This document shows, in pieces, positions 16,156-58,456 of a stretch of 64,000 nt of DNA. How positions within the stretch are numbered: position 1 is the first letter of the stretch; every line of letters starts with the position of its first letter. The notes under the pieces were generated by a model. It worked only from the letters and a program-made list of their open reading frames with translations, had not been told where the DNA came from and did no database searches. Where the stretch lies: the NCBI GenBank assembly GCA_051294905.1, contig CM119375.1:10912001-10976000 (forward strand). Direction: 5' to 3'. Both the position numbers and the translations under genes were made by a program. Source of the stretch: Botryllus schlosseri. Its lineage: Eukaryota.

Positions 16156-18234
16156 ATGGAAGATAGATCAGCAGAATTGAGGAAGCGCAAAAAACAAAAT
16201 GATGATTGCATCTCTGACGACGAATCAACGAGGCTTATTAGTACCGACGGTAATACTCCGAAGTCGACCTTTAGTTACGAACCTCTTCTTAAACTCATTC
16301 CATATCGACACATTGTGATATTTGCATCCGCGATGTTGATATACTCCAACGTCAACCATGGACAATTTCTACATGACGACATTGTGGCTATTGTAAGAAA
16401 TCGGGATGTCGTCGGTAACACATCGCTAACTAATTTATTCAAAAACGATTTCTGGGGCACCTACATCGTCAACAAGAAGAGTCACAAATCATACAGACCG
16501 CTGTGCGTATTGACGTTTAGACTGAATTACTACCTTCACGGATTGCAACCGCTTTACTTCCATCTTGTCAACTGCTTGACACATGCCTTGGTATCGGTAC
16601 TCACATCGGTGGTAAGTCACAAGGTGATATATTGCAGATACGAAGACCGCGGAAAAAATCTCGCCTTTCTTGTGGGCTTGGTATTCGCCACTCATCCAAT
16701 TCATACAGAAGCAGTCGCGAATATTGTCGGCAGAGCTGAATTGCTGTCGGCGTTGTTTTTCCTGGTGGCTGTGCTTTTGCATAACATCAGTATCAAATGC
16801 GATTCCAGAATAGTTGAAGTCGTAACATTATCTATGTCTGTTTTAACCGCTGGATGTGCAATGTTAATGAAAGAGAGTGGTATCACAGTTTTCGGTTTGA
16901 TGTTTGTGATAGACGCGTTCAACGTGTATGCAACTTTCAATGTCAGCAAAATGTGCGCCACAGTTTGGAAAATATTCAGGGTTGTGATGATCATGGCAGC
17001 GATGTCATCGATTCTGTTCTTACGGTTTTACGCAATGGGTTGGACAAAACCGACGTTTTCATCGGCGGACAACCCAGCTTCGAAAAGTCCGTTTTTAAAA
17101 ACACGCTTTCTTACCTACTCATACATCAGCTGGGTCAATTTTAAACTACTATTGATGCCAATTAATCTCCTCTACGATTATTCGTATGATACCGTCCCGT
17201 TGGTTGACTGTTTCAGCGATTATCGCAGCATCGCAACGCTCGCATTTTTCACCACCTCGTTTCTTGTTGTTCTCAAAATTTGTCGGAAATGTCTGTTATA
17301 TGAATTTCTTACGCCAGAAGCATGGGGTATGTTATTGCTCATTTTACCGTACATTCCGTGCTCGAACATATTTTTTCCTGTTGGGTTCGTCGTCGCTGAG
17401 CGAACGCTGTATTTGCCGAGTATAGGATTCTCGATTTTGATGGTATGTTTTATAAAAAATTACATCGAAGTTAAATCTCGTTCGGCATCGCACATTTTAC
17501 TCATCGCACTGTTGGCGTTCTACGCCGCAAAAACCTGGGAAAGAAATAAGGTTTGGCAAACGAAGGAAGCCTTGTTCAAATCCGGCATGGAATCCGCCCC
17601 TGATAATCCGAAGATTCGTTACAACTGGGCGAATTACCTCCGAGAAACCCACCGCTACGAAGAAGCGGTCATACATTACGAGGAGGTACTGAAATTACAA
17701 CCGGATTATCCCGGAGCGCTGAATAATCTTGCGGTCATACTCGAGAAAAACGATTCTACGCTAGAGCGAGCCAGGGAGATGTACACTCGTTTGATTCTTA
17801 TCGTGCCGGACCGGGCCGAAGCGTACATGAATTTAGCTTCGATTTTTAACCGCACCAAAGATTATGAGAAGGCAGCGGATATCTATTTGAAGATGATGAG
17901 TCGACATATGTACCCTATTCTGCCGACCATATCTCTTGCCGAGACTCTCGTGGAGAACAATTCGCTGGACAGTGCGGAATCCGCAATAAGTAATCTGCTC
18001 TTTCAGTTTTGTCACGCCAGGAGAGACGAGCGTGTCTTGGGCCTTTTGGCAGAGCGTCGCGCGGCGCTTAAGCTCAATAACAATCGTCAAAGCAAGCAGT
18101 GTTTTGACGAGAAGGCACTTTTCACGCGGGCTCTGTTACTGTACGCGCGCATACTACATTCCAAAGGTCTCTTCGAAGAATCTGAAACTATGACGCAATC
18201 TGTTTTGAAAGTACGGAAGCAGATGGAGGGATGA
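16156..18234 (+). CDS. TMTC1: Intronless TMTC-family protein O-mannosyltransferase (multi-TM + DUF1736 + TPRs), most like TMTC1
   Basis: 692-aa ORF with FLHDD, NDFWG, SHKSYRPL, HPIHTEAVANIVGRAELL, DNPAS..TRFLTYSY and VVAERTLYLPS motifs, then TPRs. AATAAA at 18248. Paralog assignment tentative. Confidence 0.9.
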   Translation: MEDRSAELRKRKKQNDDCISDDESTRLISTDGNTPKSTFSYEPLLKLIPYRHIVIFASAMLIYSNVNHGQFLHDDIVAIVRNRDVVGNTSLTNLFKNDFWGTYIVNKKSHKSYRPLCVLTFRLNYYLHGLQPLYFHLVNCLTHALVSVLTSVVSHKVIYCRYEDRGKNLAFLVGLVFATHPIHTEAVANIVGRAELLSALFFLVAVLLHNISIKCDSRIVEVVTLSMSVLTAGCAMLMKESGITVFGLMFVIDAFNVYATFNVSKMCATVWKIFRVVMIMAAMSSILFLRFYAMGWTKPTFSSADNPASKSPFLKTRFLTYSYISWVNFKLLLMPINLLYDYSYDTVPLVDCFSDYRSIATLAFFTTSFLVVLKICRKCLLYEFLTPEAWGMLLLILPYIPCSNIFFPVGFVVAERTLYLPSIGFSILMVCFIKNYIEVKSRSASHILLIALLAFYAAKTWERNKVWQTKEALFKSGMESAPDNPKIRYNWANYLRETHRYEEAVIHYEEVLKLQPDYPGALNNLAVILEKNDSTLERAREMYTRLILIVPDRAEAYMNLASIFNRTKDYEKAADIYLKMMSRHMYPILPTISLAETLVENNSLDSAESAISNLLFQFCHARRDERVLGLLAERRAALKLNNNRQSKQCFDEKALFTRALLLYARILHSKGLFEESETMTQSVLKVRKQMEG

Positions 18235-38800: not shown

Positions 38801-41800
38801 GAGTTATAATTGCCTTCAATTGTCTGCAGAACATACATGTTGAAGCATAAAAGCAAGCAGCAATGCCTCTATTTTCCGAAAATAAAGCTACACTTATTAA
38901 AAATTTTACTATCGACCATATTTGTTATTAACGTATACCAATGCCTTTATTTTCCTACAATAAAGCTACACTAATTAAAAAATTTACTATCGACCATATT
39001 TGTTATTAACGTACTAATCACGCAAAGTGTTGAAATCGTATCCGATACAACTTCTCCGTATTGCTCTTTGCCTAAACTTGGGGCCTTATAATATGGGGTA
39101 GGGCTCCATGCCATGATATTCTCTAAAACGGGGACTTATAGTAAACAAAGGGTTAGTATCGCATTTTCATATCAATACTATAATTTGCATCCCATGATGC
39201 GAAAGAATGCTTATTCTGTCGAAAATTGATACCTCCTTAGATGCATCAACATGAATCAAGCTCTCTGCACCTTCCGCATAGCTCAATTTGCAGCTTTAGA
39301 CAGTCCCTGCGAACGAATTAACACTCTTTTCAAAACTACTTACTTACTTGAGTAGATTTAAAGTCAGTAAATTCTGCTTCTACTTCAAGTAGTTTTAGGT
39401 GGCTTACGGAAGAAGAACTTCTACTCGTACTTGAGTAGATTTTTTCGTCGCTACTTCTACTTCTACTTGAGTAACTTTCTTGACTACTTTGACCACCTCT
39501 GGATGGAATAACCAATATTATTTACAGAATTCATTCACAAAATTTAGCAACCAGATGCACAATTGCACAATGCACATAGTAAGGCCCCAAGAAGTTGCAT
39601 CGATTAAACTCTGTGGTGGGCCCAAGATCGGTGCAGTCCTGGACGGACGGGGGCTAAAAATGTTGTTTTGGACCTGGTTACAACACACAACCAGATAAAC
39701 GCACCGACCTAACACGGCTAACAGTACAGCAGGGCTGTCAAACATACGACCAGCGGACCTCCAGCCGATTTCATTCGGCCCCTGAAGAAATCTGTTGCAG
39801 ACCCAAGCTATCACCAGAGCTCACATTAGAGATTGCCCAATTCAGAACCTATGTTCAACTCCACTCCTGTATGCAGTCGATAGGCGAAGCTTTGCTAGTG
39901 TGACGTCATATTGATGGACACTGTGTTTATAACTCATTACAAAATCCGCTAGTAGGCGCTTAAGAGTGTTCGGAATACCACAAAAATATGGCAACACTAA
40001 TTTTAATATACCTTTCGTTTGAGTCAGCAGTGGCGTAGCAGCCACTTGGCGATTCTGGCTCTGCGCCAGGGGCGGCAAAATGTGTGATCATCTTTTTTCT
40101 TTTCTTTTTATTCAACACAAGTTTTCCAGTAAATATAAATGAAAAGATTGATATTATTTCACAATTTGAGCGGTATTTTCAACGAAAGTCTGGGGCGGCA
40201 GCATATGCTTCTACGCCTCTGAGTCAGTCAAGCCGTTCATTGGATGTTTTATTGCGAATTTTAGGGAATATTGTTCGCAAAACGACCAGGCCCTTGAAAA
40301 TGACATGGAAAAGTGCCTAATGCATCCCGGGTGCTACTTTGATCGCGAGTTACACATCTTGCGTCAGTCATTCGGGCACCAGGTCTTGCCAAGAGTTCCG
40401 GTGTGTCACCTGGCCATACGAAATCACAAATTCCTGCAGAGAACAGAGAAGGCGACTAGACAGGTAAATATCAGCACGATCCTTGGTCCCATTTACCTCG
40501 TCTGATTTCCACTCTTTACTTGCAGTTGGGTAAATGGAATCCTGCCTTGACGCAATGCATTTTGACTCAATATGCAGAAGAGATTTACGATTCTCCAAAA
40601 GGTTGCGATATGAATGACGTCATAGAGCATTTTGGATACCTTCCTAAGATGGCGGGATGGAATGGTGAGTGAGCAACTGAGCAAGGTGGAAGCGGAACAA
40701 AGTTATGCCTATAATTTCAAATTGGTAACATTACCGTTTGTCAATCTCTATAGTAATCCCATGTATTGATGACATAACATGGCACCTAATACCATATCTG
40801 TTGATCGTCATCGTCATGATTTTATATGCAACAGTCATTCCTGAGTTATTAAATCGGCATCTTTTCATACTTATCTAAATCTCCTCACGGGTATTTCGTT
40901 GCTATTTTTATCAGGAATTCAAGAGAAAGAATGCTTTCTAATAAACGGATGCTGGAGTCAATCGAGGGGATGCTTTTACCCGATGAAAATGTCCGAGCTT
41001 TTTATCAAGTCAGGTCAAAGCATCGCCGCTTCAAAAGATATGCTGAGATCTACTAGACAAAGATACGGCATGCCGAAATGCCAAAACTTCGACGCTTCGA
41101 CTCCAAAAAAGTTTTTGAAAAGTTACCACAATTGTCTCTCGTCAGGGTGCGCATTAGATCCTGCTGTCAGCGATAAAATGTACTATTACAATCTGTGGAA
41201 TCTGACGAATTCCCTGCCCCCGCAACTGCAATATCTAAGTTGGGTTGATATAGCTAACAGCAAAATGAGGGCAGATAATTACGAAGCAACTCTCAACAGC
41301 TATCGCCGAATGTCCGTAACTGATCAAAGTGCTTTGCTGGTTAATTCATTGGGATCTGTATCAAACACCCGTGTAACTAATTTAATATCATCCATCAATA
41401 CTGCTAATTTGTTCAATCCACTAACATTCCAGTTGTCTGGTATCTCATCTAACCTGAACAATGGTATTAAACTGCCGTTCGGCTTTAATGCCCAAACCTC
41501 AATGCAGCCTGTCGTAAAAAGTGTCGGCCCTGATCTTTGCCCATACCGACAGGTTCACATGTACAATTTCCCCACATTGAAAGGAAGGTTCACGGGATGC
41601 TGTGAACGAAATCTATGCTATCTTCCCAAAAACTATCAAGCTTTACAAAGATCTGGCATGTCAAACTATTTCTCAAACTGGGGCCAATGGTCCATGTGCA
41701 GTAAATCTTGCGACTCTGGCAAAACATCACGCACCAGAGTGTGTATAGGCTCGCGATTCAAAGATTGCCACGGAGTATACGAGGAATCGAATTCGTGTAA

Positions 41801-42308
41801 CACTTATCCATGCCCGGAATGGACACAATGGGGCTCATATATCCCATGCAGCGTTTCATGCGGTGGAGGCACCACTTTTCGAACTAGGAAATGTACTGGC
41901 AAAGGGTGTGTTGGGCCGAGAAGACAGGATGTCAACTGTAATACTGGAAGATGCCCACAATTTTCCAACTGGCTTCAGTGGAGTCCCTGTACTGTGACGT
42001 GCGGTGTCGGAACTAGGCTGAGAACACGGAAATGTATACATCCCGGTTCTTATAAATGCCCCGATAAGGATCCCATCGAAGAAAAGGGCTGCAGAGCGTT
42101 CTGTGGAAAAATCGTGTGGGGCGCATGGTCAAATTGTGATGACAGCACGTGCAAGAGGACAAGGGTACCGAAATGTAGATATGAAAACGGAGAAGGCCAT
42201 TGTCAAAATGTTCCATCGATCCAGACCAAATGGTGTGAAAAGGTACCCTGTTACTGCAGACGATATCCAACATACGGATTTTGCCAATCATGGAATAGAG
42301 CGCGTTGA
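35861..42308 (+). CDS. Secreted 757-aa protein with trefoil-like Cys motifs and 3-4 thrombospondin type-1 repeats. Exons 35861-35987, 36190-36309, 36369-36500, 37337-37499, 40265-40463, 40526-40664, 40915-42308
   Basis: Signal peptide MAPVWIFMVLLVALSSVEC. All six introns are GT-AG with consistent phases (1,1,1,2,0,1), summing to 2274 nt. TSP1 motifs WGQWSMCSKSC, WTQW..CSVSCGGG, WLQWSPCTVTCG. Trefoil-like ECCF..C and GIQEKEC..GCW..GCFYP. TSP1 call is strong; upstream exon linkage is manual. Confidence 0.8.
36590..36700. repeat. Dispersed repeat, second copy at ~45935-46040
   Basis: gtgggtgtctgatt(c/t)..aaagac.actccaagt..ttt.gacaccttcctatcttt occurs at both sites. Confidence 0.7.
38134..39501. 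mobile_element. Non-autonomous TIR element, family D (CTACTT/AAGTAG subterminal repeats)
   Basis: Ends cagaggtggtcagtaac / actactttgaccacctctg. Inverted copy at ~62400-63683; decayed copies at ~52750-55085 and ~58457-60110. TSD not preserved; probably hAT. Confidence 0.8.
38879..39012. repeat. Local tandem duplication (~78-bp period)
   Basis: aataaagctacact.attaaaaa.tttactatcgaccatatttgttattaacgta occurs twice. Confidence 0.85.
40028..40221. mobile_element. 194-bp MITE with a 6-bp TSD (superfamily unassigned)
   Basis: Ends cagtggcgtag / ctacgcctctg; agtcag on both sides (40022-40027, 40222-40227). Confidence 0.75.
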
Positions 42309-45634: not shown

Positions 45635-47813
45635 CTTCAAGGAATACCACGTGTGACTGTCATCATCGTCCTTGTGCCAAAGAAAATTTACAGATTGAAC
45701 TTTTTCAAGTCATAATTATACTGATACTCGCATACTTGAATTGAATCACGCAGACAGGTCTCGGTTTTGCTTGCCCAACCCTACGTAGGCTGTCTGGCTC
45801 GACTCACCTTTATTCTGGGCTTCTATATACACCGCATTCAGAGTCGATGAGCAACCGTGGTTTCGACATATTGAATCCACCTACTTATCATTCTGCGTGC
45901 ATGGCATATGTTTACATCGTCCAGCTAGGCCCAGGTGGGTGTCTGATTCTAAAGACCACTCCAAGTCGTTTTGACACCTTCCTATCTTTTCATTGGATCG
46001 CCATCTTGCAGTGCTTTTGAAATTAAACTGAACTGAACTCGGAGTTTTATTGCGTCATCGCTGCCGTTTTTATGTTCCTGCTAAACAGTAATTGGGATGA
46101 ATGAACTGACGTAAATTCGAATATCCAATCCAGATCAACTCTATAGCACTTTGTACAAACAACGATACTTTAACAATGGCGCTGAACAAATCCACAAATC
46201 TTATATAAAATATACTCGCGGTGTCGAAGACTATCGTCAAGTGTCTTTCTCTCGGATTCTGTGCATTGTTACTGCGACTACGTATGTGATACACCATAAA
46301 ATATAGTTGCGATTACATCGATCTTGTCAGTGGGATTATTTACTTTTAGGGCTGGGACCGAATTGCGATTTAGGTAGTTTGAATATGGACAGACCCATAA
46401 TGAGATCAGGAGTTCGCGTGCTGCGGATTGTGAAATAGGTAAACAGAGTAGGCTACTATGACATAGAGAGGTACTGAAATGGTTTGTAGCAGACTCTAAT
46501 GTAGGCTATATTTGACACAGTAAAGGTTAAGAATCTTATGTCTATGTTGCTCTTGAGTTCTGCAGTCAATTACCGAAACACGCTCGCTGCAACCAAACAC
46601 TGACTGATACAGGGGTCTGGGTTGAGCGAAGATATATGTCAGCTCGCTACGGCCAGCGAAGTGTGAAGTCTCGAGTTCCGTATGCGATGCGTCCTCATTA
46701 GGTTTTTGCTCGATTTTAGTGCATAGTCAGAGTGGCTTACCTCTGACCCCCTACAGCTCTCGGTACTGCTGTAGACTGTGGACTGTGGTGCTATTGATTT
46801 CTCCATTCGGTGATCTAAAGCGTTGCGTTTGACCTAGAGCTAGAGCAATTGCTGAGCTATAGATAGTGGTATATTGTCGCTGTGTAGTTGGGCTTAGGGT
46901 TTTACCCTAAACTGAATTCAGTTTTACAGGCATTTTGATTTTAGAAATGCACAGTCGCGTTACCGAATACCCCTCATAAATCATGTTATGGCCATATGGA
47001 CAAATATGAATCATATTATAGATAGATTGATATCCATTGGATATCTTTTGCGTCCTTGTCAAGGGTGAAATTTGAGGCACATGGGGATAAAATTTTAGGG
47101 AGGACTCTTCATTAGATGCTGTATAGGAATACTAGAATAGAATGATCTAATACAGGGGTTTTCAAGCTTTTTGCTCTTCATGGCCTCATTTCGATCACAT
47201 ATTTATAGTGTATAGGCCATTCTAGTGCCTAGTGGACAGTCGTAATGGCAGTGGCTCACCTGGGCGCCAAATATCACTGTTGAATTGGCTACCTACAGGG
47301 GGACTTCGCATCGCTGACGACAGCCCATGTGGCCCTTATGGAATCTCGGTTTATTTTTTGAAATAAATCCTGCGTGATGAGAGCTTTTCTGCGTTAAATA
47401 ATTGAGTAATTGCCAGACTGAAATTAGTGGTTGTTTTCGGCAATAAGTTGCGCGTGACATTAGGGTTTCTTCCGTAGAATAATTAATGAATTAATTGGAA
47501 AGTTGCGCGTGACGTTTGCCACCAATTCCACTCTGGAGTAATTGTACAGAAAATTCTGCGTGACGTTGCCACCAATTCTACTCTGGCCATGTGGTGTTCT
47601 GTGCCATCTGCCCATCACTGTTTTCTTGTGAAATAACTTGTGCAAAAAAGTTTCTATTTGTAGAGAAGAAACCTCGGTTTACTATGGGCACTGAAATCGC
47701 CAATATTAATGTTTTGAAAGTCATTGTCATATTGTACAGCACATCGCCAATCATACTTAGGCAATTATCGCTATTGCTCGTGTCGCACCATGACTAGAGC
47801 TTTCAGCAGCCGG

Positions 47814-50800
47814 ATGAAGATGAAGTTATCCGTAGCTCTTTTGTGTCTCACTACTCTTCATCATATGGAAGCAGCGCCTACCAACACTAAAGGTACGGTG
47901 ACATATTTTGATGAAATAGAAATTCCTGCTTAGTCATATTACCAAGTGTGGTAGATTTTATGACAATAATGAAGTGAGAGAAGCGACTTTTGGATTCGGA
48001 GAACCCTCTGTGCTCTATCCAAGCTTGACTTATTTTGAATGCAATCGCATGTTATTATTTACTGTGTCAGCTGTTGTTCACTGTCTTCACAACCTAAATC
48101 TTTTAAAGTCACCATTCGCCATACTAGATTATGCTAGTATGCCCCTAAGATTCAGTCATCAATAGTGCACCAGAAAATTATTTGTCATTCGCTTTCCCTC
48201 CTTGTGAGTAAGTCAATATTCACATATCTACTGAATTGAATAAATCTATCTAAATCTATATTTTACTATAGGTACCGTAACTCGCATGCATATAGAGACG
48301 CTTACAGGAGCAAGATTATCTGTTCCTTGTTGCATTGATATTTGTACATCGATTTAACCTGATTAATCTATTAGAATTCACAACATTGTCTGTTTCCAAA
48401 ATAACCCTCCTCCCCCTCCCGGTTATTTCCTTCATTTTCTCTCGGCGGGCAACGCGTCTGCTATTTGGCCTCGAATTGTTTATAAAATTTGCGTCATATT
48501 GTACATTGTGAATATTTGGTATTTTTCAACTCTGATCTTTCGATACTGTTCAATTCCTGAGATCGGGATATATACTGATATGTTGCCGCTCCGTTCTTGG
48601 GATTTAAGGCAAGACAATACTTTTTCAGACAAATCCCTAGCCAGCCAATGAGAAGTGTAGTTGTCCCAAAATTTTGATTCAATGCTACCGTCTCGAATCT
48701 TGCTGTGCAGACCCTTTGCCTAAAATTTCACCAATCACCTATTTATTCATCTTCCTCTGTACCCACTCTTTGCATTATTGTATTGCGCAGGGTACATGTG
48801 AGATGTGTTTTTCTGATGTCACCATCAAGCTATTCGTTGCTTCTTCCATACCCAAGCCAGCTTTAGTTCTGGCCGTGATCAATTTGACATTAACGTGCAA
48901 ATTTTACCGTGTGTGTGTTCTTGTTCTCTGATCTCTTGTTTGAACTGCCAATGCAGGTGACCCGGGACTGTCTGGAAGTTTAAGTGACAGCAGCAACGTT
49001 ATACCGCTCACTTCACCTACGCAGTTTGTCCCAAATTCGGAGTTGAAACATCAACGACAAAATGATGCGAGTCATGCAGCGGGCGATAGATTTGATGATG
49101 GCTTAGACACTCCAGTGGACGCACAGCCAAACCGTGATCGGAATATCCCCCAACAGCCGAGGAACAATCCAAACTCGGACTACGATGATGACATTTTACA
49201 ACCCGATTCTGCAAGCAGCCTTCGAGCGAACGATGATCAAACTGCCGACAGTAGCCCGAAATTGAGTAATCCCACCCTCATATCTAACAATCCCGATATT
49301 AAAGGAAACAACAGACGTCCACAACCGGGAATTAACCCAAAGCTAGATGCTCGCAACGTCGACAATTTCCATGACTCGGCTACAGGCAAGCCCGCGATGA
49401 CACTGAAGGATTCTGCTGACGAATCAGAGTCGCAAGATACTGAAAATTTCAACGCTGAAGGACACCCATCTGATGACCAATTTAAATTTGAAGAAGGGTC
49501 ACCCGAAATCAGCCCGAAGCCGATCACTCCGTCACGTACGATTGCAGACGCAAACAACCGCGCTCTTGTTGCCAAGCAATATAGTTCCACTACTCTGATG
49601 AGCCCAACTTCGTTATCCACTACAGGTAAACCTGTAACTAATAGCAATGCAGTGGATAACAGTTATCGTCTAGATTCCGAAGCATCCAATGATGACAATA
49701 GCGAAGTGCCTATCCAACAAGATGATCTCGGGAAGAAGCAAAACGGTGATCTTAGCGAAACAACCAACGCGATCCCGCCAAACACGCTTACCTACATTTC
49801 AAATCTTGTTTCTTCTACTCTTTCACCGACTGTGAAATTATCACCAAAAAGTACCGAGGGACCTAACAACATTCCAAGCACAAGTCTGACTGTTTCTTCT
49901 TCGCCACAGTCGGACAGTGCGGAAGGGGAATTCGGAAACGATGATGAACCTGACCCAGCAAATGATCCCGCGGCTGTTGTAACGATTGCAAAATATGAGT
50001 CTCCGATAACGGCAACCGCCCCTGATCAAAATCCTGCGTCACAGAACCTCACGCTTCCAAACACGATCGGAAATGGCGGCATTCCTGGTACTACAGGTCG
50101 CGATCAATCAGCGATTGATTCTGAACTGTTGCGGAGCACAAAATCACCAGAATCAAAAAGTCTTGAAATGACAAAAGCTGGTATCGTACCGGCGGTATCA
50201 AATACTTCAGATACCCAAAATATTGATGTCGATAAATTTTCAGTCAGACCTGCGCATGAAGATGACTCGGAAGATGTCAATATTGCTACAACAGATTCAG
50301 ACTTTCAAAACGTTGTCTCTTCTACTGATACTGTCGCTGAACTTGCAACATCTTCAATCAAGCAGCAGCTTGCTTTTACCGAGGGATTGAAATCATCTCA
50401 ACCTGAGACTAGCTCGCCCAAAGTGCTTCCAGATGATACCGTTGAAGAAACTACACAATCTCTGATATTGTCCACTACAGCGTCACGAGTCACCACTTTA
50501 TCTTCGGAATCAGCCAAATCGTCAACTACAACATCCACATTGTCCACAATTACCACTTCAACTCCTGTCACCAAAAAAGGAAAGGCAAATACCAAGTCAA
50601 CCACTAGTTCAACTACGCTGTCTTCTACTTCCACGAAACTACTGTCTGCTACCAAAGAACCAAGTGTATCAAAAGATGAGAAAATAGAGCACACCAGGTG
50701 GGTTTACACTTCCCATTATCACGTTACCGTTCACACCGAGTAATATTGCTCCCCTGAGAAATGTTGCTGTGTTATAACAGGAGTTCTCAATCAATTTTAG

Positions 50801-53800
50801 CGTCAACCTCCAAATCATTTTGGGTGTTTGCGTCAAACCCTTGACAGTGAAATCTGGGGAAGATGATGACTAAAAAAAGAATCAGCTTCGCCGACCCTAA
50901 TCATGGCCCATCACTTTTGTTCCACCCCCCTGACGGCCTGATTACTGGTTGGAGACTTGAGTGCAATTATTAGTGTTTGTATAATTTGACGAGCACTGAG
51001 CATATGCAAATTGAAGACACAAGTCAAAAATAAAGACATATCTTACAATTAAGAACATTTATTGTTATTATTGTAATTTCAACATTGGCCTGCCATGGAC
51101 CTCAGATTGAAAATCAATGCGTTAGATGCTGGAGAAATATAGCAATTGAAACCTTACAGGTGCTCCTTTTAATTCATTTCAAGTACCCTTTGATGAAGAG
51201 AATCCATTACATATTTACCCCCAGACAGGTTACATTATGAAGAGCACTTGACCTTGCATCAATACATTTGTACCTGTAGATTTTGGCATGCAGCCATCTA
51301 AACTCTATTTTTGTTTTAGAAAACGGCCAGTTTTGATTACTGAAGGCGGCCGTGAGCATGAGCCTTTGTCGGATGATCAATCTGCAGAAGCAGTCAGCCA
51401 AATTGCTACTGGTGATTACCTTGCTTTCTGTACTCGTATTATCACTGTTGTACACCTATACTACCAGTATCACCACATTATATGTTTGTTTGTGCATTGA
51501 AGCAATCCTGCCCTGAGTGTGTGTGCTATTGCAACACACAATTTATCTGGTTTCGATAAGATATTATTTTTGATTGTGCTATTCCACCCCCATACAATAT
51601 CGTGATTATGATGTATAAATACTCCCGCCATGCCATATGCATATGGTCTAGATTTATCATAGCTCGTTGATTTTGTTCCCCAGGTGCTATATCATATTCA
51701 ATGTTTGAATTTTCAGATGCAAGCCAAACTTCATCAGACGAAAGTGGAAGTACTGCAAGGAATGGAGGTACAGCCATTTATGAATGCTGATATATTTTCG
51801 TTCACACCATACTTGTTTCATACTGTGAAGTGAGAAGATGGTTATCAAGTTTGATAGTGGTCATAGCAGCCACTTAATCATGAGAATACTGTGTTTGTGT
51901 TTCCATCCAATACGATTTGCATTTGCCATTGATGCGTCAACTGCTTTTTGAATGGTGATGGTCTCATACTGTCCTTCAAATCAACCACCAATGATAAGTT
52001 GACACTTCAATTGCTTAAGAAGGAACTGGTTTGAAAAGTTATGCATACGAAATATACACTCAAATACAGGATTGTAATGACTCGAGTCAATTTGTGTATT
52101 GACTAGACTCGAACCAAGTCATATGATCCCAGACTAGGATGGCTAAAACAGACATAATATTGTAGCTTCGAAGAATAGTAAAGTCCCCGCATTATAGGTA
52201 TTTCGCCTATCTGCCAAGATACTTGGAAAATGTGGTCAGAAACTGTTGCTGACGAGAATTATGATATTATGAAGGCACGCCATTCTATATCACTCGAGCA
52301 GAGTTGAAAGAAGTAGTTTGAACTGGATTGAAGTCAAAACTGAACAGTGAACACAATGACTCGGACTCGAGTCGCAACACTATGACGCTCCACTCACTGA
52401 CTTGGACTCTGTGGTGAATTGAAAATGACTCGACTTGACTCCAGTCCAAACTGTAAAATTGAGATTGATTTGTGATTATGAACGTTGTGACTTGGCACTT
52501 GGTTACAACCCTGCTCAAATAGCAATCTTTGCGTTTTATTATGACTGTGCCAATGTACTTTTCTTTACGAATGAATTAATTGAATTGCGTTGCTTAACTC
52601 TGCAGGCACTCGATAGACGTCAAACCTTTCCTAGCAATGGTTATTGGCGCACTGTAACGATCAAGACAACTTTTTCTTGCTGCATTCCGCATTTAAATTT
52701 CCCCAAAGGTCGCGAGTTATATTTTCAGTGCATGTCTTTGCTTCACAGGTACTCCAAGTAGTCAGTGCTGCTGCTAAAGTAGAAGTAGAAGTAACGCCGA
52801 TAATTTCTACTCTATTACAAGTATAAGTATTAATTTCTGAGATGTTAAGATCACTCAACGTGGGAGTAGAAAATGGGAGGTATTAAAAGTAGCCAAGTAA
52901 AAGTAGCTTCGAAAAGAATATTTGTTCGCATATTTATGGCAGGCGGCTGGATCAGTGGTTCTCAACCTGATTGTCTTCGCGGACCCCCTTTGGACCGTCT
53001 TGGAAACTCCAATTTTAGTTCAAATTTAGCTCTATTACCGTGCAACCGTCATCTGGCTTGTGCGAATATTAACTGGAGGCTAGTGCTAAACAGCAGCAAA
53101 ATGACCTTTCTTGAAATTAGCATCGTACCATTTATGTAGAAATTGGGAAGACATTTATTATTTTGAAGCGAATTCTGTGGCTGCATTTCTTGAAATACAC
53201 TGCCGTGTCTTGAGAATCAGCGCCGTCGATTTGACATGAACGAGTGCTGAAATTCTATTAATCTCCATAAAGATAGTTGCTGACGGATGCAATAATAACA
53301 CGTGATGCTTTCAACGACACATTTGGGTCTGATCGCAACATACATGGCACCAACATCATCATCATTTTATTAATATAATGCCCAGCCTAGTCATTTGTAT
53401 GTAGTAGCTCATCTTGAAGTTATTTTGGAATAGGGGTTATGGTTATGTATATCATAGGAGAAAATGTTTTTTTTTGCAAGCAGATTTATTCCGAAACCCC
53501 CAAAAAACGTGTCTAAACAGCAATATGCTTGTATCAGTAGGCTATTGGCAATTTGGTGATAAAAATGAGTTTGCGCAGTAGAATATTTTGTCTCAGACGG
53601 CCATTCTGTTTACGTGAGTGCTCAAGTTTTTGCATTTATTACGCGAAACTGCTTTGTGATTTCTCTAATTAAAAAAATATAGATATTAGGTTATCACTAA
53701 GGCAAGTTTTTGCAACTTTTACAACTTTTTTTTACAGCTTCCGACAGCTTTCTAGATACTCGAAAACTATTTACTATGATGTTTCAAGCTGTTTGGAGGG

Positions 53801-56473
53801 TTTTTATAGTGCAACTTTTCTCTATTTTTCATGCCAATTTTTACTGCAACTTTTATCGAATAATGCGTTAAAATGTAACAGAGTAATTTAAAAACATGCT
53901 ATAAACCATTTCTAGTATGGTTTTATTCTCTTTGATTTGCAAAACAAAGATCTGTATGATGGGTTAGCTGCATCTCACTGTTATCTATAACACAATGGCA
54001 GTTCAACTACCCCTGCCAAGCACGACCGTGCCCGAACAATATGGAAATAGATTGCTTTATTAATTCCGTCGTTCAAATTTGAAATAGTTTCATATTTCAC
54101 GAGCGCCCAGGCGAGACTGCCGAAAATTACATTTTCACTGAGTCACCTTTTTCAGGCTATTGCCTTTGAAAAGTCACAGAGACTGCGTTTATCTGTAATG
54201 CCTTGGGTCAAGTTCGCAGACCTAGGGAGTTCGGGATGTGTTATTTGACTTGTTTTAAGGGAAGGGGTTATCGCTATGCTGTTTGGTTTCTGGGGGAAAT
54301 TTTTCCCGCATTGCGCAATTTTCTTGGTATGTGCCGGAAAAAATGTGATTTTTGGCCGTTTCGTCAGACCGTGCGATAAATGGCAATAAAGTTGAGAAAT
54401 TTGACAGCTCTGCTGGAAGTAGGTTATACAACGGAACCTTTCGAGTATCTCATACCCTAATAATTTGACAAAAATTATAAATGCAACTTTTGTTAAAATT
54501 GAATGCATCTTTCCCGCGATTTTAGTGCAACAAAAACTTGCCCTAGCCCTTGCCCCCAACTTAGTATTGGCTTGATTTCAAAACCCAACCTAGTCTACTC
54601 TGCTTTACAGACTTGATTTCGCAAGTCAAGGATATGGTCGTGAGTACTCTAACAACAAATCTTCCAACCGTCTTGCATTGACGAAACGTTGATCTTTTCA
54701 GGGTCAGGTTGAACCGTTTTACATCGCACTGACTGTTCTGATCATGATCGCTGTTCTGGTGCCGACCTGCTGCATTTGTTGCAAGTGGTGCTCCAGGCGA
54801 AGAGGCGGAATCCGGCACAGACGTCTCAAAGTACATGCTGTAATTTTGTTGTACAACACTTCCTGTCCTGACTATTGGCTTCGGTGACCTGAACGCTTTC
54901 ATGTTATTGTCGTTCGTGGGGAGAGTCGAGAGATGATCCCAAGTAGTCCTCGATGTGCTACAAACGTAGAAGCAGAGTTTAAATCTATTCCAAAGTACAA
55001 GTACGAGAAGGAATGTCCAAAGCGTAAAAAATATGTATAGTAGCAAAAAGAAGTTTAGTACGGCACTGTTGCTGACCACCTCTAATATTAGAATGGTTAC
55101 CAGCAATGTTCCCTCTAATTTTTCATGAGACTGCGCAAACTCACTAAACTCGCTTTGCGGCCCCTCGGCCACGGCTGGACTCCCGATTTACCCGCATTTT
55201 TCCGGTAATGCGTAGTGTTGACCAACTCCCGACTTCACCGAATTTCGCAAAACTCTGACGTTAGCTGCGCCGGACTAGAGTGTTTTATCGCATTTTAATA
55301 GAATTTCTACAACAAGAGATGGTGTTGCTTCATCTGATTACGAATTACTCACTACAAATTAGTGATGTACATTTATACATCTGAAATGGTCGTCAATTTG
55401 GTCTGATGATCATCAGTGCCTTCTGCGAAAGATACAGTGATTATTTTTTTTGAACCACAAGTGGATTTTTTTGTGCATGGCACACAACACAACAATTTTT
55501 TCTTTCAAATTTCACTGGCTACGTGATAAAATTATTATGTTTGCTAAGACAACACTTCAGATCCAATTTGGCTCAATTCCAGCCAGTAGAAGCGAGATTT
55601 GGCGCGCATCATCTCTACTGACAGCCTAACAATTTTATGGGGCAGGCAGAGAAAACTTGAAATTTTATTTTCTATTTTTTATATGACAAATTCAAAATTT
55701 TCTACTGCAAGAATCTCGCTTCTACTGGTTGGAATTGAGCCAATTTTGGTATGCAGCGTTGTTTTAGCCAACATAATAATTTTATCACGTAGCCAGTGAA
55801 ATTTGAAAGAAAATATTGTTTTTGAACAGCCCTAGCGTGCACAGAGGCAACATTGGTTACCAGTAAACTCGGCACTTGGCAACCCCTAATCCTTGCCTCA
55901 AACTATTGCTACCATAACCTCTAACTTTAAACCTAACTTAACCCGAATGCACTAATTCATACACCTTCATACCAAGTGCCAAATTCACCAAATGATGAAT
56001 TCACAAAGTACCGTATAAGGGACTAACTCAATTCACGCTCGTATCATTCCAATATTTATGCATCGATTTCACATAGTAGTTATTATATTTCCGATACCAA
56101 ATTCAACAAGTGCCGAACTCAACATGCCGAATGTACTAGCCATCATTGCAACAACCCTTGAATCTGTGTAGGTGACAAACTGTATTGTTTTTACCGTTGA
56201 TTATAATCTGTGTTCAACGTGAAGTTATTTCATATCCGGCCTGAATGTTTAGCATGCTAAAAATCGGATACTCCTACACTGAATTTTCAATTCCATCTGA
56301 ATTACAGGAATACGGAAAAGAGAAGGAGTTCTTACTGAGAGAACGTGGGAAGGTAAGGACAGGCTGAGATTAGTTTTTGTTGTGATAACACTATTATTGT
56401 ATTGTTATAGGCAAGCAAATACAGCAACGACAGCGTAACACTACTTGAGGGATCTTCTGAAGACGAATTTTAA
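47814..56473 (+). CDS. ARMH4: Type I mucin-like membrane protein (742 aa) with an ARMH4/C14orf37-like TM and tail. Exons 47814-47892, 48957-50697, 51320-51411, 51717-51767, 54611-54639, 54702-54830, 56308-56352, 56411-56473
   Basis: Signal peptide MKMKLSVALLCLTTLHHMEA; S/T/D/P-rich ectodomain; TM FYIALTVLIMIAVLVPT followed by CCICC; tail RRRGGIRHRRLK...NDSVTLLEGSSEDEF*, against the remembered vertebrate ARMH4 end RRRRNGFKRHKRK...QDRVMLLADSSEDEF. GT-AG phases are consistent (2229 nt). The small middle exons are less certain. Confidence 0.72.
52067..52513. mobile_element. hAT MITE (GACTC/GAGTC repeats) in an intron
   Basis: TIR caggattgtaa / ttacaaccctg; perfect TSD ctcaaata. Confidence 0.9.
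52953..53700. mobile_element. hAT MITE family A, truncated inverted copy
   Basis: Starts cagtggttctcaacc; interior matches 58801-59647 and rc of 3278-4105; second TIR not found. Confidence 0.75.
55104..55855. mobile_element. Family C MITE enlarged by nested sequence
   Basis: Ends caatgttccctctaa / gaggcaacattg; perfect TSD gttaccag. Confidence 0.85.
55491..55820. repeat. Long inverted repeat (foldback), ~109-bp arms with a ~112-bp spacer
   Basis: 55491-55599 is the near-perfect reverse complement of 55712-55820. Confidence 0.85.
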
Positions 56474-58456
56474 ATTCCCCTCTCGGCCGGTCGAGGCTTA
56501 CACCATTAGAATCCTATCAATAGAAAATTGAAATGGTCAGCCCATAATGCATACTGAAGGATCGAGTGTGAGTGTGCAATACATCATTGAACTAAGGTTT
56601 TATTGTTGCAAGTTTCATATAAATCGTGTGTATTCGTCCATAACTGCTAGTGTTGTAATCATGATGGTAATTCAAGTGTTTTTAACGCATTTTTGCTTTT
56701 TCTGTACAGTATTCTGACCCAGTGTGCAGGCTTCAATCGATCTATTTTTTTAATGTAATCAATGTTATCAAAACGGAATACTTATTCTGTAGCACTCTTC
56801 TGTATTATCTCGCTTCCCATCAGTGTAACAGTAGTGATTATATTTGTGCATCATGTATGGAGCAACGGAATCCCGTATTTTTGGCATGGCTTTTTATTCC
56901 GTTTAAATTAACACATGTGTTATTCGTCCAAGTGCCAGCTGTACAACCGCAATTTGTTTTAGTCGTAGCTTCCACACTGTTGCCAAGTCTCAGCTTTATG
57001 CTGGCCAGAGAAGTTTAAAATGGGCAGCCTTGACTGATTAATAGAACTATTTTCTCAATGAGAAAATCAATGGATATTTTCCTTATCGCAAGCAGGTTGC
57101 ACCCTTGTTGAATGGTAGGCTACACTTCGCAGTGATGCTGGCTCTCAATTTGGGTATTGGCTATGCTGTTAATTCGTATCTAAGCCTTTCATACACGGAA
57201 TATCCGGTTTCTAAACTGGCGATATGATTCCTTTTACATTTTTCAAATATTCCTTACAAGTCAAATTTTGAAAGCAACGCGGCCTTAGCATGAAGCGTAA
57301 TAGCTCGATTGCCAGCCTGTGATGGAAAATGCACACATGTACCCTGTGGAGTACACTCATTCCACTGTACCGGGCGATTTGAAGGATTTATGTGGATTTC
57401 GTGTCCTGTTACAGACCATTTTCTGCACAGCCTGAAGCTTACTCGCAAGAGGTATTGTGTAATCACTGTGCTTCAGATAATACATTGGTGATGACCTTTT
57501 GAACAATCCATTCTTTTCAATAATCGCAGAGGTATTGAAGTCTAGGCGTACGTGTTATCACCTTTTCTGTGTTACACATTTGGACAGCATGTATATGATC
57601 TCACGGTCTATTTATTGAACAGTGGTCTCGAAATAAGAATTTGTGCCCCACAGCAAAGTTGCCACGGTCACCTGCCTGGTGTTATGTCGGGAAGAGGAAC
57701 CATGACCCGTCAAATTTCGATTCAGGCAGTGTAACATTATCGTGTTGGTTATGTCACAAACAATCCACGACGCGATGTCATTGTGGGAATTATTTTTTAC
57801 CCTCCAAAATTTTCATCCTGGATTCGCCATTGACAGCTGGTGCAACTAAAGAGAAAAATCTGCTGTCTCAAGACGCATCAATTAGGGTTTATAGGCAAAA
57901 CCGTATTTATTCTCAATTCGTCTTGCAATAACGTGACAAAATCGAGACTTCTGTTTGATCATAATTATTGCCTTTGCCACAGTTGCACATGCTGTTTTCT
58001 TTTTTTCAGTAAGCCAGTACTCTTCATATTTATAGAATTGCTTTTTAGATTTAGCCTTGTCGCTCTGTACCAAATTACTATTGAGGGTATTATTTGTACC
58101 ACATTTATCCTACGTGTCTATGGAGTCGCATTGCTTTTTAGTCGTCTTTTTGCAGTTCGCACTGTTGCTATTACCTGTTGTAAATGAGGTTCCATTATAT
58201 GAAAACGAAAGTGAATTTGTGTTGTCCGAATGCACTAGATCAGAATAAGCAAGAAGTTTGAATTCCGTGATATCGCTATTTGGAGTGGTAATGGTAGATT
58301 AATCCACTGCCATCGACAAGAGAAACCGCGGTATCAAGTCTTGTCTATAGCATGTTTCCAAGTATCTTAAGATGATCTGGGCTCCATCCCCCACGTCACT
58401 TACTGTTCTCACAATATGTTAGCAAAATAGCACGGAAAGACCCGGGAAGAAGGATC

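What the first reader, a model, noticed from the sequence alone, without database searches (positions are those of the whole stretch)
47814..56473. Invertebrate-type ARMH4/C14orf37 (UT2)-like mucin with a conserved acidic dileucine tail hidden in micro-exons
The ORF track shows only a low-complexity 566-aa ORF. Joining it to six small exons (29-129 nt) spread over ~5 kb gives a type I membrane protein ending ...RRRGGIRHRRLKEYGKEKEFLLRERGKASKYSNDSVTLLEGSSEDEF*. The last 14 residues match the vertebrate ARMH4 end as I remember it (DRVMLLADSSEDEF). The tail has two [DE]xxxL[LI] sorting motifs (EKEFLL, DSVTLL), a juxtamembrane CCICC cluster (palmitoylation candidate) and a CK2-like SSEDE site. Inference: ARMH4 may predate vertebrates, with only the TM-tail conserved.
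Basis: partly seen in the sequence, partly recalled or inferred. Interest (0 to 1): 0.72.

Follow-up and report, generated by a model that had tools for sequence, protein, structure and literature searches.

The report
Sea-squirt relative of vertebrate ARMH4
This is a real, spliced and expressed 8-exon gene for a 742-residue single-pass membrane protein, and its short inner tail ends almost exactly like mouse ARMH4, so this little-understood vertebrate signalling protein probably already existed in the common ancestor of sea squirts and vertebrates.

Summary
RNA contigs from three studies join the 566-codon ORF to six small exons (92, 51, 29, 129, 45 and 63 nt) at GT..AG borders.

The product has 742 aa:
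- a signal peptide;
- a Cys-free ectodomain of about 650 aa rich in Ser, Thr, Asp and Pro;
- one TM helix ending in CCICC;
- a tail of about 51 aa containing EKEFLL and DSVTLL and ending in SSEDEF.

A search of 1.84 billion proteins found relatives only in tunicates: Styela clava, Ciona, Clavelina and three transcript-derived proteins. All are unnamed or misnamed.
- Tails are 47-80% identical, while ectodomains are at noise level.
- Styela has the same 8 exons, the same phases and a TSP1 gene upstream.
- The terminal three-exon layout also holds in Clavelina and Ciona.

No vertebrate protein reached significance in database-wide searches. However, two papers give the mouse Armh4 tail, which ends DRVMLLADSSEDEF. 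DRVMLL is its experimentally tested endocytic motif.
- The window matches 10 of these 14 residues and one tunicate orthologue matches 12, at the same C-terminal position.
- Pairwise BLASTP gives 35.8 bits (E 3e-9).
- A tunicate-tail HMM scores mouse at 17.1 bits, against 9.0 for the best of 5,000 shuffles.

Homology to ARMH4 is probable (about 0.8) but not proven. I class it as a new member of a known kind, of moderate interest.

The parts
47814..47892 (+). Exon 1 (79 nt, ends in phase 1). It encodes the signal peptide MKMK...HHMEA followed by APTNTK. An alternative in-frame ATG lies at 47790.
   Evidence: ATG and a GTACGG donor are visible in the sequence. Styela clava has an exon 1 of the same 79 nt and the same phase. 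No reads were laid on this junction.
48957..50697 (+). Exon 2 (1741 nt, phase 1 to 2). It encodes the ectodomain: Cys-free, low in complexity, rich in Ser, Thr, Asp, Pro and Asn.
   Evidence: ORF and composition. The donor is confirmed by the 50697>51320 joint in three studies. A related species shows 60% identity and keeps the same donor (P0001).
51320..51411 (+). Exon 3 (92 nt). It starts with the conserved RKRP dibasic site, followed by a GRE(G/H)E motif.
   Evidence: Joints. The synonymous SNPs at 51407 and 51410 explain the shifted joint. The motif is conserved in P0002, P0003 and P0004.
51717..51767 (+). Exon 4 (51 nt), encoding a Ser/Thr-rich juxtamembrane stretch.
   Evidence: Joints 51411>51717 and 51767>54611.
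54611..54639 (+). Exon 5 (a 29-nt micro-exon), encoding DLISQVKDMV.
   Evidence: Joints 51767>54611 and 54639>54702 in X1, X5 and X9, plus 2 raw reads of X23.
54702..54830 (+). Exon 6 (129 nt, phase 0/0). It carries the TM helix (54717-54782), the CCICC cluster (54768-54782) and the basic stretch RRRGGIRHRRLK (54795-54830).
   Evidence: Joints and hydropathy maximum. Styela has the same 129 nt, Clavelina 117 and Ciona 132, all in phase 0. The exon is single-copy in its own genome.
56308..56352 (+). Exon 7 (a 45-nt micro-exon) encoding EYGKEKEFLLRERGK. The first acidic dileucine motif, EKEFLL, lies at 56320-56337.
   Evidence: Joints 54830>56308 and 56352>56411. The matching exon is 45, 42 and 42 nt in Styela, Clavelina and Ciona.
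56411..56473 (+). Exon 8 coding part (20 codons plus TAA). DSVTLL lies at 56429-56446 and the C-terminal SSEDEF at 56453-56470. The 3' UTR continues past 56519.
   Evidence: Joint, with contigs running past the stop. The peptide matches the mouse Armh4 end at 10 of 14 residues.

Best explanation
This is the sea-squirt orthologue of vertebrate ARMH4 (C14orf37/UT2).

Shown: it is a type I membrane protein with a fast-evolving ectodomain, acidic and rich in Ser/Thr, and a strongly conserved TM-plus-tail module that is encoded by three small terminal exons.

Inferred:
- The ectodomain is probably glycosylated.
- By analogy with mouse Armh4, the tail's [DE]xxxLL motif (DSVTLL, equivalent to mouse DRVMLL) drives clathrin/AP-2 endocytosis and so sets the level of protein at the cell surface.
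- The adjacent SSEDEF terminus is a CK2-type phospho-acidic cluster that probably tunes sorting or partner binding.
- The basic juxtamembrane stretch and the tail together form the signalling or partner-binding surface. In mammals, RICTOR binding and the dendrite phenotype both need the cytoplasmic domain.
- Tunicates carry two extras that mouse lacks: a second dileucine motif (EKEFLL) on a 42-45-nt micro-exon, and a Cys cluster at the inner end of the TM helix that is a palmitoylation candidate.
For: Gene model and expression:
- Six GT..AG joints appear in RNA contigs from three studies.
- The CDS is in frame.
- All 6 exonic variants are synonymous.

Tunicate family:
- phmmer against 1.84 billion proteins found P0002 (E 9e-39), Styela clava (4e-18), P0004 (5e-16), Ciona (3e-8), Clavelina (6e-8) and P0007 (3e-5).
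- Styela has the same 8-exon layout, with phases 0,1,2,1,1,0,0,0 and exons 1, 6, 7 and 8 of the same size.
- The last six exon phases match in Clavelina, and the last three exons match in Ciona.
- A TSP1 gene lies immediately upstream both here and in Styela.
- The tail is 47-80% identical; the ectodomain is 23-27%.

Link to ARMH4:
- The mouse sequence in PMC5253643 ends ...KVMNRRRRNGFKRHKRKQREFNSMQDRVMLLADSSEDEF.
- Its K737 and DRVMLL match the Armh4 constructs described in PMC9742329.
- The last 14 residues are identical at 10 positions for the window and 12 for P0007.
- BLASTP of the P0007 tail against the mouse tail gives 35.8 bits, E 3e-9, running from the TM helix to the C-terminus.
- A tunicate-tail HMM scores mouse at 17.1 bits (P 2.6e-7); the best of 5,000 shuffles scores 9.0.

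Function, from the literature:
- DRVMLL>AAAAAA raises surface Armh4, and the ICD is required for its effect (PMC9742329).
- RICTOR binding needs the cytoplasmic domain (PMC4235746).
Against: - No vertebrate protein reached E<=0.001 when the window tail was searched against 1.84 billion proteins. A word-indexed search with the P0007 tail found only P0007 itself.
- phmmer scores against the mouse tail are only 7-15 bits, so the similarity rests on about 40 residues.
- After correction for a whole proteome, the statistics are roughly 1e-2 to 5e-4. That is suggestive rather than overwhelming.
- Acidic-dileucine and CK2-cluster tails are short linear motifs that can arise by convergence.
- Only one vertebrate sequence (mouse) was available, so vertebrate gene structure and synteny could not be compared.
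- No Pfam family covers either tail.
- Mouse lacks the Cys cluster and the EKEFLL motif.
- Every functional statement about the tunicate protein is inferred.
Confidence: 0.77

Rival explanations
1. The gene is a tunicate-specific membrane protein with a mucin-like ectodomain. Its tail acquired an acidic-dileucine plus CK2-cluster sorting signal independently. On this reading the likeness to ARMH4 is convergence of short linear motifs, not common descent.
For: Database-wide searches return tunicates only. phmmer scores against mouse are 7-15 bits. The ectodomains cannot be aligned. The language-model look-alike search returns only generic type I tails such as syndecan, MUC1 and endomucin, all below 0.9.
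Against: Identity extends to positions the motif does not constrain: the R and V inside DRVxLL, and the terminal F. The match lies at exactly the same distance from the C-terminus, after a TM helix and an RRRR-type cluster, in proteins of similar length (742 against 775 aa) and the same topology. None of 5,000 composition-matched shuffles comes near the HMM score.
Confidence: 0.15
2. The TM-tail cassette (the last three exons) is an old mobile module shared by several otherwise unrelated type I proteins. On this reading the tunicate gene shares only that cassette with ARMH4, or is orthologous to some other vertebrate gene.
For: Only the terminal exons are conserved. They are all phase 0/0, which would allow exon shuffling.
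Against: The TM exon is single-copy in this genome. No second protein family carrying this tail appeared among 1.84 billion proteins. The whole 8-exon layout, not just the cassette, is shared with Styela.
Confidence: 0.06

Closest known systems
Vertebrate ARMH4 (C14orf37, UT2); mouse Armh4, 775 aa
   Same: Both are type I proteins with a signal peptide. Both have a long acidic, Ser/Thr-rich, low-complexity ectodomain and a single TM helix about 40-50 aa from the C-terminus. Both have a basic juxtamembrane cluster and a [DE]xxxLL motif at positions -14 to -9, and both end in SSEDEF. Overall length is similar. In both, deleting exon 2 shifts the frame: mouse KO, PMC12824181; tunicate exon 2 is 1741 or 1840 nt, both leaving a remainder of 1 on division by 3.
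   Different: Mouse has no Cys cluster at the end of the TM helix and no EKEFLL motif. Its ICD is about 12 residues shorter, roughly the size of one tunicate micro-exon. The ectodomains show no detectable similarity. The armadillo-like region drawn for Armh4 could not be assessed here.
Unnamed tunicate proteins: Styela clava LOC120325491 (XP_039247534), Ciona intestinalis LOC100181106 (H2XSQ1), Clavelina lepadiformis CAK8680210
   Same: They share the tail (E 4e-18 to 6e-8), the terminal exon layout and the intron phases. Styela also shares the upstream TSP1 neighbour. These are orthologues.
   Different: The ectodomains have diverged beyond recognition. The Ciona models are only 106-156 aa and have no long ectodomain. 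The RefSeq names for the Styela protein ('splB-like kinase', 'FLO11-like') are low-complexity artefacts.
Acidic-cluster/dileucine sorting tails, such as the [DE]xxxL[LI] signals that bind AP-2 and the CK2-phosphorylated acidic clusters of furin and the mannose-6-phosphate receptors (from general knowledge)
   Same: The motif grammar is the same: an acidic residue at -4 from LL, followed by Ser residues in a CK2 context (S-x-x-D/E).
   Different: Those are motif classes, not a family. No sequence relationship is implied.

Membership tests
ARMH4 (C14orf37/UT2) | Type I topology: N-terminal signal peptide and a single TM helix near the C-terminus | tested here: met
   The N-terminus MKMKLSVALLCLTTLHHMEA is hydrophobic. 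The only strong hydropathy peak is at aa 670-691, 51 aa from the end. The mouse TM helix ends just before K737 of 775.
ARMH4 (C14orf37/UT2) | Endocytic motif DRVMLL ([DE]xxxLL) in the ICD, at positions -14 to -9 from the C-terminus | tested here: met
   The window has DSVTLL at aa 729-734, the same offset. The orthologues have DRVTLL, DRLTLL or DAVTLL. The mouse motif and its mutant phenotype are described in PMC9742329.
ARMH4 (C14orf37/UT2) | C-terminus ...SSEDEF-COOH | tested here: met
   It is identical in the window, in five of the six tunicate orthologues, and in mouse. Clavelina ends in SSEDEL.
ARMH4 (C14orf37/UT2) | Statistically significant sequence similarity to a vertebrate ARMH4 | tested here: inconclusive
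   Pairwise BLASTP of P0007 against mouse gives 35.8 bits, E 3e-9. The HMM gives 17.1 bits, P 2.6e-7, against 9.0 bits for the best shuffle. However, phmmer gives only 12.7 bits for window against mouse, and there was no vertebrate hit in the search of 1.84 billion proteins.
ARMH4 (C14orf37/UT2) | Intron positions or synteny shared with vertebrate ARMH4 | not testable with these tools
   No vertebrate genome or ARMH4 gene model could be reached. Only the fact that deleting mouse exon 2 shifts the frame is known.
ARMH4 (C14orf37/UT2) | Armadillo-like helical region in the ectodomain (the source of the gene name) | not tested
   No Pfam domain was found in the ectodomain. The region is Cys-free and of low complexity. 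No structure was predicted.
ARMH4 (C14orf37/UT2) | The cytoplasmic domain binds RICTOR or is required for signalling | not testable with these tools
   This is known for the mammalian proteins only (PMC4235746; PMC9742329).
Tunicate LOC120325491 / LOC100181106 family | Conserved TM-tail, 8-exon layout and upstream TSP1 neighbour | tested here: met
   
Syndecan and other named type I tails (Atlas look-alikes) | A match to the Pfam domain (for example PF01034) | tested here: not met
   No such Pfam hit appeared at E<=10. All Atlas scores were below 0.9.

The most novel reading that the evidence does not exclude
ARMH4 may be a 'tail-defined' receptor. On this reading, the only part under constraint since the tunicate-vertebrate ancestor is a module of about 40 residues: the TM helix, a basic cluster, DRVxLL and the SSEDEF terminus. 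That module would act as a phospho-regulated endocytic and signalling switch, while the ectodomain evolves freely. Tunicates would retain an ancestral micro-exon that adds a second dileucine motif, plus a palmitoylatable Cys cluster, both lost in vertebrates. The unstudied SSEDEF terminus would then be as important for function as the tested dileucine motif.
Probability: 0.35. Interest if true: 0.5.

Novelty: new member of a known kind. Interest (0 to 1): 0.4.

Why it matters
ARMH4 is a poorly understood vertebrate membrane protein. Published work links it to mTORC2 and STAT3 signalling, Purkinje-cell dendrite growth, podocytes and ageing.

The literature searched here calls its intracellular domain 'conserved across vertebrates'. 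I found no paper that mentions it outside vertebrates.

Recognising tunicate orthologues does three things:
- It dates the gene to at least the tunicate-vertebrate ancestor.
- It narrows the conserved core to the TM-proximal basic stretch, the DRVxLL motif and the SSEDEF terminus. That points to the untested SSEDEF end as a target for mutagenesis.
- It offers Ciona as a simple experimental system.

It also corrects misleading database names for the tunicate proteins.

This remains a modest advance in annotation and evolution, not a new mechanism.

Tried and rejected
- Pfam scans of the tail, the large exon and seven tunicate proteins gave only sub-threshold noise: Hemotin, MLANA, WBP-1 and EphA2_TM.
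- A word-indexed homologue search with the large exon found one related-species ORF only, P0001.
- The same search with the 88-aa tail found nothing in the 48-154 aa length band.
- The same search with P0007 residues 350-437 found only P0007 itself. ARMH4 proteins longer than 765 aa fall outside that length band, and the expected score is too low in any case.
- The ESM Atlas look-alike search returned generic type I tails below 0.9, which is uninformative.
- A search of the animal's own genome for a second copy of the TM exon found none.
- The supplement of PMC9742329 holds the vertebrate alignment only as an image.
- Full-text searches for the peptide did work and yielded the mouse sequence.
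Only its last 135 residues were used.
- Intron 1 could not be checked with reads, because only one read-laying run of at most 6,000 bases was allowed.
- The X23 raw reads were too sparse to establish the strand. Read orientation was mixed, so the library is probably unstranded.
Full report
**What is in the window**

I read the flanking DNA and then laid RNA-derived contigs from three independent studies, plus one raw RNA-seq run, on 50520-56519 (runs chosen, laid).

The contigs show these joints:

| Joint | Runs |
|---|---|
| 50697>51320 | X1, X5, X9 |
| 51411>51717 | X1, X9 |
| 51767>54611 | X1, X9, plus a matching loose end in X5 |
| 54639>54702 | X1, X5, X9, and two X23 reads |
| 54830>56308 | X1, X5 |
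| 56352>56411 | X1, X5 |

All are GT..AG. The 51411>51717 joint was printed with odd ends only because the transcripts differ from the assembly at 51407 and 51410. Both positions are third-codon positions and both changes are synonymous.

Together with a first exon at 47814-47892, this gives 8 exons of 79, 1741, 92, 51, 29, 129, 45 and 63 nt. All six variants seen inside exons are synonymous, which fits a coding sequence under selection.

Intron 1 was not covered by reads. It rests on a good donor and acceptor, and on the fact that Styela clava has an exon 1 of the same 79 nt and the same phase. An in-frame ATG at 47790 could be the true start.

**The protein**

- It has a hydrophobic N-terminal signal-like segment.
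- The ectodomain of about 650 aa has no Cys or Trp. It is 15% Ser, 12% Thr, 9% Asp, 8% Pro and 7% Asn.
- There is one strong hydrophobic segment at aa 670-691, ending in CCICC.
- A basic stretch, RRRGGIRHRRLK, follows the TM helix.
- The tail then carries EKEFLL and DSVTLL and ends in SSEDEF.
- No Pfam domain matches any part.

**Relatives**

- The large exon finds only a 60%-identical genomic ORF from a related species. That ORF reads into the same donor site (P0001).
- A full HMMER search of 1.84 billion representative proteins with the last 88 aa gave six true hits. All are tunicate or from unnamed transcript assemblies: P0002 (E 9e-39), Styela clava XP_039247534 (4e-18), P0004 (5e-16), Ciona intestinalis H2XSQ1 (3e-8), Clavelina lepadiformis CAK8680210 (6e-8) and P0007 (3e-5).
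- Their database names are 'uncharacterized', 'unnamed', or low-complexity artefacts such as 'splB-like kinase' and 'FLO11-like'.
- Earlier agents in this scan had already called this genome a sea squirt. My hits agree with that.
- The last 75 aa are 47-80% identical to these proteins, whereas the ectodomains align at 23-27%, which is noise.

**Gene structure and synteny**

- The Styela gene has the same 8 exons, of 79, 1840, 107, 42, 41, 129, 45 and 63 nt. The phases (0,1,2,1,1,0,0,0) are identical to the window's.
- In Clavelina the last six exons have the same phases. In Ciona the last three exons (TM exon, a 42-nt micro-exon, and the final exon) are laid out the same way.
- The Styela gene is preceded on the same strand by a TSP1-repeat gene. 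So is the window gene, where TSP_1 domains lie at 40899-42305.
- The TM exon is single-copy in the window's own genome.

These are therefore orthologues in all three major ascidian groups. The 'hidden micro-exons' are an old, conserved feature.

**The ARMH4 link**

No vertebrate protein appeared in the database-wide searches, and no Pfam model covers the tail. I could not fetch an ARMH4 sequence from the protein tools, so I looked for it in the literature.

- Shuster, Li et al. (PMC9742329) state that the Armh4 intracellular domain is highly conserved across vertebrates. They report a six-residue endocytic motif, DRVMLL. Changing it to alanines moves the protein to the cell surface and strengthens its overexpression phenotype. 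Their ICD deletion starts at K737.
- A full-text search for that peptide found a mouse protein printed in Table 4 of PMC5253643. It ends ...IKVMNRRRRNGFKRHKRKQREFNSMQDRVMLLADSSEDEF.
- Using the residue numbers given in that table, the Lys in IKVMN is residue 737 and the protein has 775 aa.

Comparison of the tails:

- The last 14 residues of the window protein match mouse at 10 positions. P0007 matches at 12, and the other tunicates at 9-10.
- The match is at the same offset from the C-terminus in every case.
- BLASTP of the P0007 tail against the mouse tail aligns from the TM helix through the RRRR cluster to the end. It gives 35.8 bits and E 3e-9 for that single comparison.
- An HMM built only from the seven tunicate tails scores the mouse tail at 17.1 bits (P 2.6e-7). 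The best of 5,000 composition-matched shuffles scores 9.0 bits.
- Single-sequence phmmer scores are only 7-15 bits. This explains why ARMH4 could not surface in a search of 1.84 billion sequences, so that blank is not evidence against homology.

Scaled to one vertebrate proteome, these statistics come to roughly 5e-4 to 1e-2. Several coincidences add to that: exact C-terminal anchoring, the adjacent TM helix and basic cluster, the same topology, a similar length, and a low-complexity acidic Ser/Thr-rich ectodomain. Taking these together, I put homology at about 0.8.

**What differs from mouse**

- Mouse lacks the Cys cluster.
- Mouse lacks the EKEFLL motif.
- Its ICD is about 12 residues shorter, close to the size of the tunicate 42-45-nt micro-exon.

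Whether vertebrates lost that exon or tunicates gained it cannot be decided here.

**Mechanism**

Shown:
- The gene is expressed and spliced.
- The topology is type I.
- Among tunicates, only the TM-tail is conserved.

Taken from mammalian experiments:
- The dileucine motif controls endocytosis and surface level, and the ICD is required for signalling (PMC9742329).
- The cytoplasmic domain binds RICTOR (PMC4235746).
- ARMH4 runs far above its predicted mass (PMC9844829).
- A shorter form circulates in plasma, which suggests cleavage (PMC12824181).

Inferred for the tunicate protein:
- DSVTLL drives AP-2-type endocytosis.
- The two serines in SSEDEF are phosphorylated by CK2, since both have an acidic residue at +3.
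- The Cys cluster is palmitoylated.
- The ectodomain is O-glycosylated.
- The conserved RKRP site at the exon 2/3 border may be cut by a proprotein convertase.

**Novelty**

No paper in the searchable library mentions ARMH4 together with Ciona or in an invertebrate context, and the tunicate proteins carry no ARMH4 name. Orthology databases could not be consulted. I class this as a new member of a known family, of moderate interest.

Noticed in passing
window 16156-18234 (+): A single uninterrupted 692-aa ORF with a TMTC O-mannosyltransferase DUF1736 domain (E 2e-22) and TPR repeats. It looks like an intronless TMTC-like gene or a large exon of one.
   Followed up: partly
window 40899-42308 (+); L004 1-1042: A TSP1-repeat gene lies directly upstream of the ARMH4-like gene on the same strand, both here and in Styela clava. 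This is conserved microsynteny.
   Followed up: partly
window 51920-52520 and 53520-53920 (intron 4): RNA-contig depth is very high here (up to about 12,700, against about 25 on the exons), with many chimeric joints and loose ends. These look like interspersed repeats transcribed from many loci, not part of this mRNA.
   Followed up: no
window 50696-51329 (aa 607-610) and aligned positions of P0002, P0003 and P0004: A conserved H-x-R-K-R-P site followed by GRE(G/H)E sits exactly at the exon 2/3 border, about 60 aa outside the membrane. It is a candidate convertase or shedding site. Mammalian ARMH4 is reported to circulate as a shorter form.
   Followed up: partly
L006 6001-6776 (Ciona intestinalis LOC100181106): The Ciona orthologue is annotated as only 106-156 aa, with no long ectodomain, and a minus-strand gene ends about 1.5 kb upstream. 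Either Ciona has a minimal version of the protein or its 5' exons are unannotated.
   Followed up: partly
window 54561-55172 (-): A 203-aa ORF on the opposite strand overlaps exons 5 and 6 and intron 6. It has no Pfam match and is probably a chance ORF.
   Followed up: partly
P0003, P0010-P0012 (Styela clava XP_039247534-38): The first-version RefSeq names 'dual specificity protein kinase splB-like' and 'flocculation protein FLO11-like' come from low-complexity similarity. There is no kinase domain.
   Followed up: yes
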